A DNA stretch of 63,629 nt, the filler included, from Octopus bimaculoides (taxonomy: Eukaryota): NCBI RefSeq assembly GCF_001194135.2. It is 7 parts of 7 records of this genome, joined end to end, with 100 filler letters (N's around TTAATTAATTAA, not from the genome) between each part and the next. Parts side by side here need not be neighbours in the genome. Positions count along the whole stretch, not along the records: positions 1 to 5,180 come from NC_068984.1; 6 more parts are not named here. One strand, written 5' to 3'. This document shows, one piece after another, positions 3,580-3,859 of the stretch (position 1 is the stretch's first letter; every line of letters starts with the position of its first letter). The notes under the pieces are model-generated. The model had not been told where the DNA came from and did not search any database. It saw only the letters and a program-made list of their open reading frames with translations. The translations under genes were made by a program, and so were the position numbers.

Positions 3580-3859
3580 ATATCCTTTCTAAATATTAAT
3601 GACACTTGTGGGATTTTCCCTCTGATATGTCATTCCTAAAATATTATTCAATTTCTTTGTTCTGTTTAAAAAAAGTTTCAAAATGTTAGTCATTAATCCG
3701 TACAAAATCGTTTTATATGTTATGTAAATACGCAAAGCCTATGGTGGCTAATTTTCAAGGACGAGAATGAAATCTATTTTGTTTTTAAAGCTGGAATACT
3801 ATTTCCTTTTTTGTTCCACTATGATAGTTCTATAACTGTCCTTTCCTTACATAAAGTAC
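3580..3859 (+). other. U12-type (minor spliceosome) AT-AC intron, phase 1, 280 nt
   Basis: 5' end ATATCCTTT (3580-3588), branch site TTTCCTTAC (3842-3850), terminal AC (3858-3859). Removal gives CAT A|TT CTG = WHILTSGF and restores the TPC3 frame. Confidence 0.92.
3842..3850 (+). promoter_or_regulatory. U12 branch-point sequence
   Basis: TTTCCTTAC versus consensus TTCCTTAAC. Putative branch A at 3849 is 10 nt before the intron end, with no polypyrimidine tract in between. Confidence 0.8.

What the first reader, a model, noticed from the sequence alone, without database searches (positions are those of the whole stretch)
3580..3859. U12 AT-AC minor intron directly after the TPC3 selectivity filter
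Seen: ATATCCTTT donor, TTTCCTTAC branch site 10 nt before an AC acceptor, and only this splice joins VVNQWH to ILTSGFVLVT in frame. Established: AT-AC introns are rare, are spliced by the minor spliceosome, and occur in voltage-gated Na and Ca channel genes. Inference: retention gives ...NQWHNILSKY* (TAA 3597-3599), a channel lacking IIS6 or an NMD target, so minor splicing could gate TPC3 output. GT-AG-only gene predictors would mis-model this gene.
Basis: partly seen in the sequence, partly recalled or inferred. Interest (0 to 1): 0.8.

Follow-up and report, generated by a model that had tools for sequence, protein, structure and literature searches.

The report
Conserved AT-AC minor intron in TPC3
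The 280-base stretch is a real, RNA-verified AT-AC intron of the rare minor (U12) class in a two-pore channel 3 gene; it sits at the same codon in a horseshoe crab, an acorn worm, a fish, a frog and a bird, so it is an old but ordinary member of a known kind of intron.

Summary
Confirmed. Window 3580-3859 (+ strand) is a 280-nt intron that starts ATATCCTTT and ends AC. Transcript contigs or reads from 13 runs in 6 studies join 3579 to 3860 exactly, with no ambiguity. The spliced product reads VVNQWH|ILTSGFVLVT and aligns without a gap to zebrafish TPC3 (PDB 6v1q, E 4e-46), which scores well above TPC1 and TPC2.

The same phase-1 position carries an AT-AC U12-type intron in TPC3 of Tachypleus, Saccoglossus, a characiform fish, a frog and a tinamou. 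One unidentified genome has a GT-AG U12 version, and another has a short U2-type intron there. Fish TPC1 and TPC2 have only U2 introns nearby, 8 nt and about 35 nt downstream.

One weak point: the branch site TTCCTTAC lacks one purine of the consensus TTCCTTRAC. It scores below all 77 human minor introns I used as a reference.

Intron-containing RNA reaches 18-43% in four runs and is absent in others. This hints at regulated retention but does not show it.

Five deposited bird gene models are mis-spliced at this intron.

Verdict: new member of a known kind, moderate interest.

The parts
708..777 (+). Exon A (70 nt), encoding FRLVIMTIVNIAPSMSTYGMIML (domain II S4-S5 linker and start of S5). It is preceded by AG at 706-707 and followed by GTGAGT.
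   Evidence: The loose end before 3351 in RNA contigs (TCTATGAGTACCTACGGAATGATTATGCTT) is identical to window 748-777 (compared).
778..3350 (+). U2-type GT-AG intron (GTGAGT...TCCCGATCAG). It contains an assembly gap of N at 1674-1728.
   Evidence: U12 matrix scores -19.6 and -3.2. The junction is inferred from the loose ends.
3351..3579 (+). Exon B (229 nt): domain II S5, turret, pore helix and selectivity-filter motif, ending ...ELTVVNQWH plus the first base (A) of the split Ile codon.
   Evidence: Ion_trans 2.7e-13; N96 Q97 W98 H99 invariant in 16 sequences.
3580..3859 (+). U12-type AT-AC intron, 280 nt, phase 1.
   Evidence: The joint 3579^3860 (AT..AC, both = 0) appears in 13 runs from 6 studies. 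Orthologous U12 introns occupy the same codon position in 6 other loci.
3580..3588 (+). 5' splice site ATATCCTTT, a perfect match to the AT-AC U12 consensus.
   Evidence: The PWM score is 13.5 bits, the 44th percentile of 77 human minor introns, and no other position in the window reaches it. The consensus is as printed in PMC6259924.
3597..3599 (+). In-frame TAA (followed by TGA at 3600-3602) that ends the reading frame if the intron is retained: ...NQWHNILSKY*.
3842..3850 (+). Branch-site-like motif TTTCCTTAC, with A3849 10 nt from the 3' end. It is a variant of TTCCTTRAC that lacks one purine.
   Evidence: 12-mer CTTTCCTTACAT scores 2.0 bits, and the nearest human analogue is PLCD1 CTTTCCTTACTT at 6.8. 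The distance matches the 8-11 nt seen in orthologs.
3858..3859 (+). Terminal AC of the intron. There is no polypyrimidine tract before it (…CATAAAGTAC).
3860..3950 (+). Exon C (91 nt): (I)LTSGFVLVTNKFARLYFLAFHICCVVIIL, the link from the pore loop into IIS6.
3951..4828 (+). U2-type GT-AG intron (GTAAGT...CACTTTTCAG), used here as the internal control for retention.
   Evidence: The joint 3950^4829 (GT..AG) appears.
4829..4945 (+). Exon D (117 nt): NIFIAFVIEAFILEYTLSKQRKRETDIEVIIKELGYKTG(V), the end of IIS6 and start of the C-terminal tail. It is followed by GTAAGT.

Best explanation
Window 3580-3859 is a genuine U12-type (minor-spliceosome) AT-AC intron in the ortholog of two-pore channel 3.

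It interrupts, in phase 1, the codon that follows the invariant NQWH of the domain II pore loop. It therefore separates the selectivity filter from IIS6. It is removed precisely in mature mRNA. The intron is ancient: the same position, phase and U12 signals are present in TPC3 of a chelicerate, a hemichordate, a teleost, a frog and a bird.

The inferred mechanism is as follows. U11 recognises ATATCCTTT. U12 pairs with TTCCTTAC about 10 nt from the 3' end. U4atac/U6atac-U5 then catalyse removal.

If the intron is not removed, the reading frame stops 6 codons into it. That stop is upstream of at least two further exon junctions. The transcript would then encode a channel lacking IIS6, or would be a candidate for nonsense-mediated decay.

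Shown here: the splice junction, the sequence signals, TPC3 identity, conservation, the stop codon, and the presence of some intron-containing RNA. Inferred only: dependence on the minor spliceosome, and any regulatory use of retention.
For: - **Junction:** AT..AC joint 3579^3860 with no ambiguous bases, in 12 contig sets plus 2 raw stranded reads, from 6 studies. The DNA-like run X25 keeps the intron.
- **5' splice site:** ATATCCTTT is 9/9 to the consensus and mid-range among human minor introns. The window's two GT-AG introns score -19.6 and -12.1.
- **TPC3 identity:** 6v1q scores 160 bits and aligns without a gap across the junction (NQWH|VLTSGF), against 93.5 for TPC1 and 62.8 for TPC2.
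- **Orthologous introns at the same place and phase:** Tachypleus G|ATATCCTTT..TTTTCTTGAC..AC; Saccoglossus A|ATATCCTTT..TTTCTTTAAC..AC; Acnodon G|ATATCCTCC..TTCCTTGAC..AC; Eudromia G|ATATCCTTT..CCCTTAAC..AC; Staurois A|ATATCCTTT..CTTCTTAAC..AC; L003 G|GTATCCTTT..TTCCTTAAC..AG.
- **Read-through signature:** of 53 database proteins that read on past NQWH into the intron, 51 show x|ATATCCT or G|GTATCC, translated as [DNH]IL or GI[LR].
- **Phase:** phase 1 fits the known bias of U12 introns against phase 0 (PMC7367187).
Against: - The branch-site motif is atypical. TTCCTTAC lacks one purine of TTCCTTRAC and scores 2.0 bits, below all 77 human reference branch sites. A formal classifier might give it a lower branch-site score than its orthologs.
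- No experiment here shows dependence on U11, U12 or U6atac.
- The organism is coded, so I could not verify that it has minor-spliceosome snRNAs.
- The retention estimates rest on assembler unitig depths, which are a poor measure.
Confidence: 0.93

Rival explanations
1. The intron is not merely constitutive. Its retention is a regulated, tissue- or state-dependent switch that limits TPC3 output, on the minor-intron 'molecular switch' model. This would work through a premature stop and nonsense-mediated decay, or through nuclear retention of the unspliced transcript.
For: - In study P6 the intron-containing unitig makes up 18% (X15), 43% (X26), 32% (X27) and 23% (X28) of spliced plus unspliced depth. 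The neighbouring U2 intron makes up 6-15% in the same runs.
- In sister runs X16, X17 and X18 the U12 intron is absent from contigs although the U2 intron leaves traces. The ratio therefore varies between samples.
- The weak branch site would be expected to slow splicing. The title of PMC8848931 links minor-intron splicing efficiency to the branchpoint sequence. PMC3728624 proposes the switch model.
- Retention gives a stop at 3597-3599, upstream of two exon junctions.
Against: - Depths are assembler k-mer depths of short unitigs, not read counts.
- The library type of P6 is unknown. Total or nuclear RNA would show more unspliced precursor in general.
- The RNA runs of other studies checked for intron words hold none of them.
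- No condition or tissue labels are available.
- The higher level could simply reflect slower kinetics with no regulatory use.
Confidence: 0.2
2. It is a U2-type AT-AC intron removed by the major spliceosome.
For: AT-AC ends alone do not define the class, because rare U2-type AT-AC introns exist. The branch site here is sub-consensus.
Against: - The 5' splice site is the full U12 motif ATATCCTTT, not a U2-like ATAAGT.
- There is no polypyrimidine tract before the AC.
- The TCCTTAC motif lies at the U12-typical 10 nt from the 3' end.
- All six fully resolved U12-type orthologous introns (five AT-AC and the GT-AG one in L003) have good U12 branch sites 8-11 nt from the 3' end.
Confidence: 0.03
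3. The junction is an artefact of assembly, reverse-transcriptase template switching, or a processed copy elsewhere in the genome.
For: Most of the evidence is from assembled contigs rather than reads.
Against: - There is zero microhomology at the joint (both = 0).
- The identical joint appears in 13 runs from 6 studies, including 2 raw reads with 71 nt on the shorter side.
- The same contigs carry the neighbouring canonical junctions.
- The reading frame and homology are restored exactly.
- The position is conserved across phyla.
- The DNA-like run X25 shows only the unspliced form.
Confidence: 0.01

Closest known systems
U12-type AT-AC introns of voltage-gated Na+ and Ca2+ channel alpha-subunit genes (Wu & Krainer 1999; Fux et al. 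2018, PMC6259924)
   Same: Same intron class and subtype, with the same consensus signals (ATATCCTTT donor, TCCTT-type branch site close to an AC end). The host genes belong to the same superfamily of voltage-gated-like cation channels. Both are deeply conserved across animals.
   Different: The U12 intron shared by Nav and Cav channels lies in domain I segment S1. This one lies between the pore-loop filter and S6 of domain II of a two-domain channel, so there is no positional homology. I found no paper that links TPC, TPCN or TPC3 with U12 introns. TPCN1 and TPCN2 do not occur in the nine supplementary files of Olthof 2019 that are held as text, which include the mouse/human table of minor-intron gene orthologs. 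Some of those files may be truncated.
TPC3 (TPCN3) of vertebrates, e.g. zebrafish TPC3, PDB 6v1q
   Same: This is the best sequence match (E 4.4e-46). The motif ELTVVNQWH-(V/I)L(T/A)SGF is shared. The AT-AC U12 intron sits at the identical codon position and phase in fish, frog and bird TPC3 genes.
   Different: Identity is only 50-60%. The window's branch site is weaker than in every ortholog examined. Intron length ranges from 90 nt (Acnodon) to 9.3 kb (Staurois), against 280 nt here.
TPC1 and TPC2 genes (paralogs)
   Same: Same pore-loop architecture (VVNNW), and both have an intron close to this site.
   Different: In the one fish examined for each paralog, the nearby intron is U2-type GT-AG and lies at a different position and phase. 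TPC1 has NNWYITM|GTAAGC, phase 0, 8 nt downstream. TPC2 has its intron after SRYTT, phase 2, about 35 nt downstream.
Human PLCD1 minor intron (branch site CTTTCCTTACTT in Olthof 2019, Table S2)
   Same: It has a near-identical 'TCCTTAC' branch-site variant lacking the second purine. This shows that such a site can serve an accepted minor intron.
   Different: It is in an unrelated gene and is a GT-AG subtype.

Membership tests
U12-type (minor-spliceosome) intron, AT-AC subtype | AT...AC terminal dinucleotides at an experimentally supported junction | tested here: met
   The joint 3579^3860 has ends AT..AC and no ambiguity, in 13 runs.
U12-type (minor-spliceosome) intron, AT-AC subtype | Extended 5' splice-site consensus /ATATCCTTT | tested here: met
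   9/9 match at 3580-3588. The score of 13.5 bits is the 44th percentile of 77 human minor introns, and the position is unique in the window.
U12-type (minor-spliceosome) intron, AT-AC subtype | Branch-site consensus TTCCTTRAC | tested here: inconclusive
   TTCCTTAC at 3843-3850 matches the first 7 of 9 positions and lacks one purine. Its PWM score of 2.0 bits is below all 77 human references (lowest 5.9). The closest analogue is human PLCD1, CTTTCCTTACTT, at 6.8.
U12-type (minor-spliceosome) intron, AT-AC subtype | Short branch-site to 3' splice-site distance, without a polypyrimidine tract | tested here: met
   A3849 is 10 nt from the end. Orthologs lie at 8-11 nt. The last 9 nt are CATAAAGTAC.
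U12-type (minor-spliceosome) intron, AT-AC subtype | Orthologous introns are U12-type (class conservation) | tested here: met
   Five AT-AC U12 orthologs with full signals, one GT-AG U12 and one U2-type. In addition, 51 of 53 read-through proteins carry the U12 donor signature.
U12-type (minor-spliceosome) intron, AT-AC subtype | Removal depends on U11, U12, U4atac and U6atac snRNPs | not testable with these tools
   This needs snRNA knock-down or blocking, or suppressor snRNA experiments. The organism's genome was not available to search for the snRNA genes.
Two-pore channel 3 (TPC3/TPCN3) | Ion_trans domain whose best match is TPC3 rather than TPC1, TPC2, Cav or Nav | tested here: met
   Pfam PF00520 at 2.7e-13. 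PDB scores: TPC3 6v1q 160 bits, mouse TPC1 93.5, human TPC2 62.8, Cav3.2 42.5.
Two-pore channel 3 (TPC3/TPCN3) | Filter II region motif TVVNQWH shared with TPC3 orthologs (TPC1 and TPC2 have VVNNW[YQ]) | tested here: met
   N96, Q97, W98 and H99 are invariant in 16 sequences. The TPC1 and TPC2 motifs are listed.
Two-pore channel 3 (TPC3/TPCN3) | Two tandem 6-TM domains in one polypeptide | not testable with these tools
   The window holds only domain II from the S4-S5 linker to the post-S6 region. The full transcript sequence could not be retrieved.
Regulated minor-intron retention switch | Retention exceeds that of the flanking major introns and varies with cell state | tested here: inconclusive
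   18-43% against 6-15% in X15, X26, X27 and X28. Zero against 5-8% in X16, X17 and X18. These are unitig depths only.
Regulated minor-intron retention switch | The retained form is non-productive (premature stop) | tested here: met
   TAA at 3597-3599, 6 codons into the intron and upstream of junctions 3950^4829 and 4945^next.

The most novel reading that the evidence does not exclude
The pore-loop U12 intron of TPC3 has been kept for at least the age of bilaterians because its slow splicing is used. In this organism the weak branch site would make that splicing especially slow. Sample-dependent retention (0 to about 40% here) would then set how much full-length TPC3 is made, the retained form being a premature-stop transcript. 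That would make TPC3 a minor-spliceosome-gated channel, with no counterpart in human or mouse, which lack a working TPC3.
Probability: 0.15. Interest if true: 0.55.

Novelty: new member of a known kind. Interest (0 to 1): 0.4.

Why it matters
- **Extends a known pattern.** U12 introns are known to be enriched in voltage-gated Na and Ca channel genes. This extends that pattern to the two-pore channels, at a new position (pore loop II / S6).
- **Gives a stable marker for TPC3 orthologs.** The marker is NQWH followed by x|ATATCCT.
- **Practical effect on annotation.** Gene models that allow only GT-AG introns are wrong at this exon pair. Five deposited bird models insert or delete residues next to the selectivity filter, and are named TPC1 or TPC2 although they came up as hits to a TPC3 query and carry the TPC3 motif NQWH.
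- **Illustrates textbook minor-intron evolution in one gene.** The orthologous set includes a subtype switch from AT-AC to GT-AG and a conversion from U12 to U2. Both occur in lineages with G at position -1, as the class-conversion hypothesis predicts (PMC7367187).
- **Regulatory role is open.** Whether retention regulates the channel is untested.

Tried and rejected
- **Motif-only significance.** RTATCCTT occurs once against 0.57 expected in the window, so the motif count alone proves nothing. The argument rests on position, RNA and orthologs instead.
- **Raw-read quantification of retention.** Only about 6% of each 2026 run is read. X24 and X30 gave no reads and X29 gave two, both spliced. 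No read-level retention estimate was possible.
- **Canonical alternatives.** Twenty frame-keeping GT/GC-AG pairs exist. None preserves NQWH plus ILTSGF, and none is seen in RNA.
- **Positional homology with the Nav/Cav U12 intron.** Rejected, because that intron is in domain I S1.
- **A U12 intron at this site in TPC1 or TPC2.** Not found in the one fish gene examined for each. The look-up of an invertebrate TPC1 (Penaeus, P0107) returned nothing.
- **Literature.** No paper links TPC, TPCN or TPC3 with U12, AT-AC or minor introns. Wu & Krainer 1999 (PMC84117) is not held.
- **Structured RNAs.** tRNA and Rfam scans of the window found nothing.
- **Organism identity.** Names are coded, and the window's own protein has no near-identical entry (best 63%).

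Full report
**1. What is in the sequence**

On the + strand the piece holds four exons of one gene:
- exon A, 708-777
- exon B, 3351-3579
- exon C, 3860-3950
- exon D, 4829-4945

Joined, they give an open frame: FRLVIMTIVNIAPSMSTYGMIML | IFYYTFAIIGMEVFHG...ELTVVNQWH | (I)LTSGFVLVTNKFARLYFLAFHICCVVIIL | NIFIAFVIEAFILEY.... The product matches Pfam Ion_trans (2.7e-13).

Joining 3579 to 3860 makes the split codon A|TT (Ile), which is phase 1. Reading through instead gives NQWHNILSKY, then TAA (3597-3599) and TGA.

**2. Is it more than chance?**

The 8-mer RTATCCTT occurs once in the window, against 0.57 expected somewhere on either strand. The motif by itself is therefore weak evidence.

Position is the stronger argument. 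I built a 5' splice-site matrix from 77 human minor introns (Olthof 2019, Table S2). The site scores 13.5 bits, the 44th percentile of the real introns. It is the only one of 10,349 positions in the window that reaches that score, and the window's two GT-AG donors score -19.6 and -12.1. From the base composition printed, ATATCCTTT at one given position has a chance of about 1.4e-5 (my arithmetic).

Twenty GT/GC-AG pairs would also keep the frame open. Every one of them deletes part of the invariant NQWH or inserts unrelated residues.

**3. RNA evidence**

Transcript contigs join 3579 to 3860 exactly, with ends AT..AC and no base that could belong to either side. This holds in X3, X9 and X10, X15, X16, X17, X26 and X27, and X18, X28, X5 and X12. 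Two raw reads of the stranded run X29 span the same joint, with 71 nt on the shorter side. That makes 13 runs from 6 studies.

The same contigs carry the neighbouring GT..AG joint 3950^4829. Their loose end before 3351 is identical to window 748-777, which confirms exon A. The + strand is fixed by three things: the reading frame, the canonical neighbouring junctions, and the orientation of the X29 read pair.

The one DNA-like run (X25, even depth 10.4) is continuous through the intron. The joined form therefore exists as RNA only.

**4. What the gene is**

Against all PDB chains the scores are:

| Chain | Bits |
|---|---|
| Zebrafish TPC3 (6v1q) | 160 (E 4.4e-46) |
| Mouse TPC1 | 93.5 |
| Human TPC2 | 62.8 |
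| T-type Ca channels | about 42 |

The alignment to TPC3 runs without a gap across the junction (ELTVVNQWH|VLTSGF).

A retained transcript would encode a protein without IIS6.

**5. Relatives**

I fetched genomic loci for homologs and read the same codon.

| Locus | Organism | Donor | Branch site and end | Length |
|---|---|---|---|---|
| window | organism A (coded) | A\|ATATCCTTT | TTCCTTAC..AC | 280 nt |
| L001 | Tachypleus | G\|ATATCCTTT | TTTTCTTGAC..AC | 366 nt |
| L002 | Saccoglossus | A\|ATATCCTTT | TTTCTTTAAC..AC | 1080 nt |
| L007 | Acnodon (fish) | G\|ATATCCTCC | TTCCTTGAC..AC | 90 nt |
| L008 | Eudromia (bird) | G\|ATATCCTTT | CCCTTAAC..AC | 236 nt |
| L009 | Staurois (frog) | A\|ATATCCTTT | CTTCTTAAC..AC | 9285 nt |
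| L003 | unidentified assembly | G\|GTATCCTTT | TTCCTTAAC..AG (GT-AG U12 subtype) | 2776 nt |
| L006 | GCA_025491035.1 | G\|GTAACT | ..TTGCAG (U2-type) | 103 nt |

L004 and L005 have G|ATATCCTTT donors, but the contigs end before the acceptor. All of these introns are phase 1.

In protein space the signature is just as clear. Of 71 database proteins that contain NQWH:
- 18 are spliced through.
- 49 read on as [DNH]IL, which is x|ATATCCT translated.
- 2 read on as GI[LR], which is G|GTATCC translated.
- 2 come from the U2-type case.

The paralogs differ. Fish TPC1 has a U2 GT-AG intron 8 nt downstream (NNWYITM|GTAAGC, phase 0). Fish TPC2 has one after SRYTT (phase 2).

The U12 intron is thus a TPC3 feature. 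It is present in a protostome (the horseshoe crab) and in deuterostomes (the acorn worm and the vertebrates), so it is at least as old as their common ancestor.

**6. The weak point**

The branch site TTCCTTAC lacks one purine of the consensus TTCCTTRAC (consensus as printed in PMC6259924). On the human matrix the 12-mer CTTTCCTTACAT scores 2.0 bits. That is below all 77 reference sites, whose minimum is 5.9. The closest precedent is human PLCD1, CTTTCCTTACTT, at 6.8. The orthologs score in the 30th-83rd percentile.

The distance of A3849 to the 3' end, 10 nt, is typical (orthologs 8-11 nt).

From my own knowledge of the U12 snRNA sequence, UUCCUUAC can pair fully with GUAAGGAA, leaving no bulged adenosine. 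Which adenosine acts as the branch point (3849 or 3851) is therefore open.

**7. Retention**

These are unitig depths in study P6, with the caveat that contig depth is a poor measure.

| Run | U12 intron-containing depth | U12 spliced depth | U12 fraction | Fraction for neighbouring U2 intron (3951-4828) |
|---|---|---|---|---|
| X15 | 16.4 | 75 | 18% | 6% |
| X26 | 34.9 | 46.2 | 43% | 15% |
| X27 | 15.8 | 34.2 | 32% | 11% |
| X28 | 13.1 | 43.2 | 23% | 11% |
| X16, X17, X18 | none assembled | – | 0 | 5-8% |

The RNA runs of other studies that were checked for the intron's words hold none of them.

So unspliced or retained RNA exists. It can exceed that of the U2 neighbour 2-3 fold, and it varies between samples. 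This is what slow minor splicing with a weak branch site would give (titles and abstracts of PMC8848931 and PMC3728624). It is compatible with a regulatory switch but does not show one.

**8. Mis-modelling**

Five deposited bird gene models (P0019-P0023) came up as hits to a TPC3 query and carry the TPC3 motif NQWH. They are named TPC1 or TPC2 protein, partial.

They read NQWH-DIL... into the intron and rejoin at false GT-AG sites. P0019, for example, reads NQWHDILYGGSGFAKVT, whereas the true splice gives NQWH-V-FASGFAKVT.

NCBI models for Tachypleus and Saccoglossus, and the Acnodon model, splice this intron correctly.

**9. Comparison with what is known**

U12 AT-AC introns are a known class, and they are known to be enriched in Nav and Cav genes. 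The intron those channels share lies in domain I S1 (PMC6259924), so there is no positional homology with this one.

I found no paper that connects TPC, TPCN or TPC3 with minor introns. TPCN1 and TPCN2 do not occur in the nine supplementary files of Olthof 2019 that are held as text, which include the mouse/human table of minor-intron gene orthologs. Some of those files may be truncated. From my own knowledge, human and mouse lack a functional TPC3, which would explain why this intron is missing from the best-known lists. Automated catalogues such as intronIC/IAOD probably contain it for annotated fish or bird genomes; I could not check this.

Phase 1 fits the bias of U12 introns against phase 0. 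The GT-AG U12 variant and the U2 variant both occur where position -1 is G, as the class-conversion hypothesis predicts (PMC7367187).

**10. Verdict**

This is an ancient, correctly spliced U12-type AT-AC intron of TPC3: a new member of a known kind. The regulatory idea remains a hypothesis, at about 0.15-0.2. Interest is moderate (0.4).

Noticed in passing
junction onto window 3351 (the upstream sequence is not in the window): RNA contigs in X15, X16, X18, X26 and X27 join a different upstream sequence to exon B in place of exon A...CGGCTTTTCAAGACTTTTGCTAACATTAAA[AG]|ATTTTC. Read in exon B's frame it gives TAA AAG|ATT, an in-frame stop two codons before exon B. It could be an alternative 5' exon or UTR, or a poison exon. 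In X16 it lies on the dominant contig (depth 142). The sequence is absent from the window at up to 3 mismatches.
   Followed up: partly
window 4022: The intron-containing contig of X27 reads G where the genome has A (depth 6.47, that one run only). This could be a polymorphism or A-to-I editing of the unspliced RNA.
   Followed up: no
L003 6287-9062; L006 3336-3438: At the orthologous site, one genome has switched subtype to a GT-AG U12 intron (G|GTATCCTTT...TTCCTTAAC...AG). Another has a 103-nt U2-type intron (G|GTAACT...TTGCAG). Both have G at position -1. This reads as a small worked example of subtype switching and class conversion.
   Followed up: partly
L010 3650-3903 (Tachysurus TPC1): TPC1 has a U2 GT-AG intron only 8 nt downstream of the TPC3 U12 site. 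The exonic TGG TAT ATC ACT there contains ATATCAC. Whether this reflects intron sliding, conversion or an independent gain was not tested.
   Followed up: no
L008 (Eudromia) 3001-5670 and 6981-8670; proteins P0019-P0023: Bird TPC3 gene models are labelled 'TPC1 protein' or 'TPC2 protein, partial' and are mis-spliced at the U12 intron. The tinamou locus lies next to a BUB1-like kinase gene (Mad3_BUB1_I plus Pkinase). From memory, that matches the vertebrate TPCN3 neighbourhood.
   Followed up: partly
L001 1-12549; L002 1-14278: In Tachypleus and Saccoglossus the annotated TPC3 is split into two adjacent gene models (231 + 244 aa, and 520 + 232 aa). The break lies one or two exons upstream of the U12 intron, near the S4-S5/S5 exons.
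   Followed up: no
window 111-155, 1665-1728, 1971-1988, 3076-3086, 3217-3273, 5156-5180: Low-complexity features in the introns: (AT)n microsatellites at both ends of the piece; a poly-C run that abuts an assembly gap of N (1674-1728); a (GT)n run; a poly-G run; and a 21-nt AT-rich tandem repeat (2.6 copies) about 80 nt upstream of exon B's acceptor. There were no tRNA or Rfam hits.
   Followed up: partly
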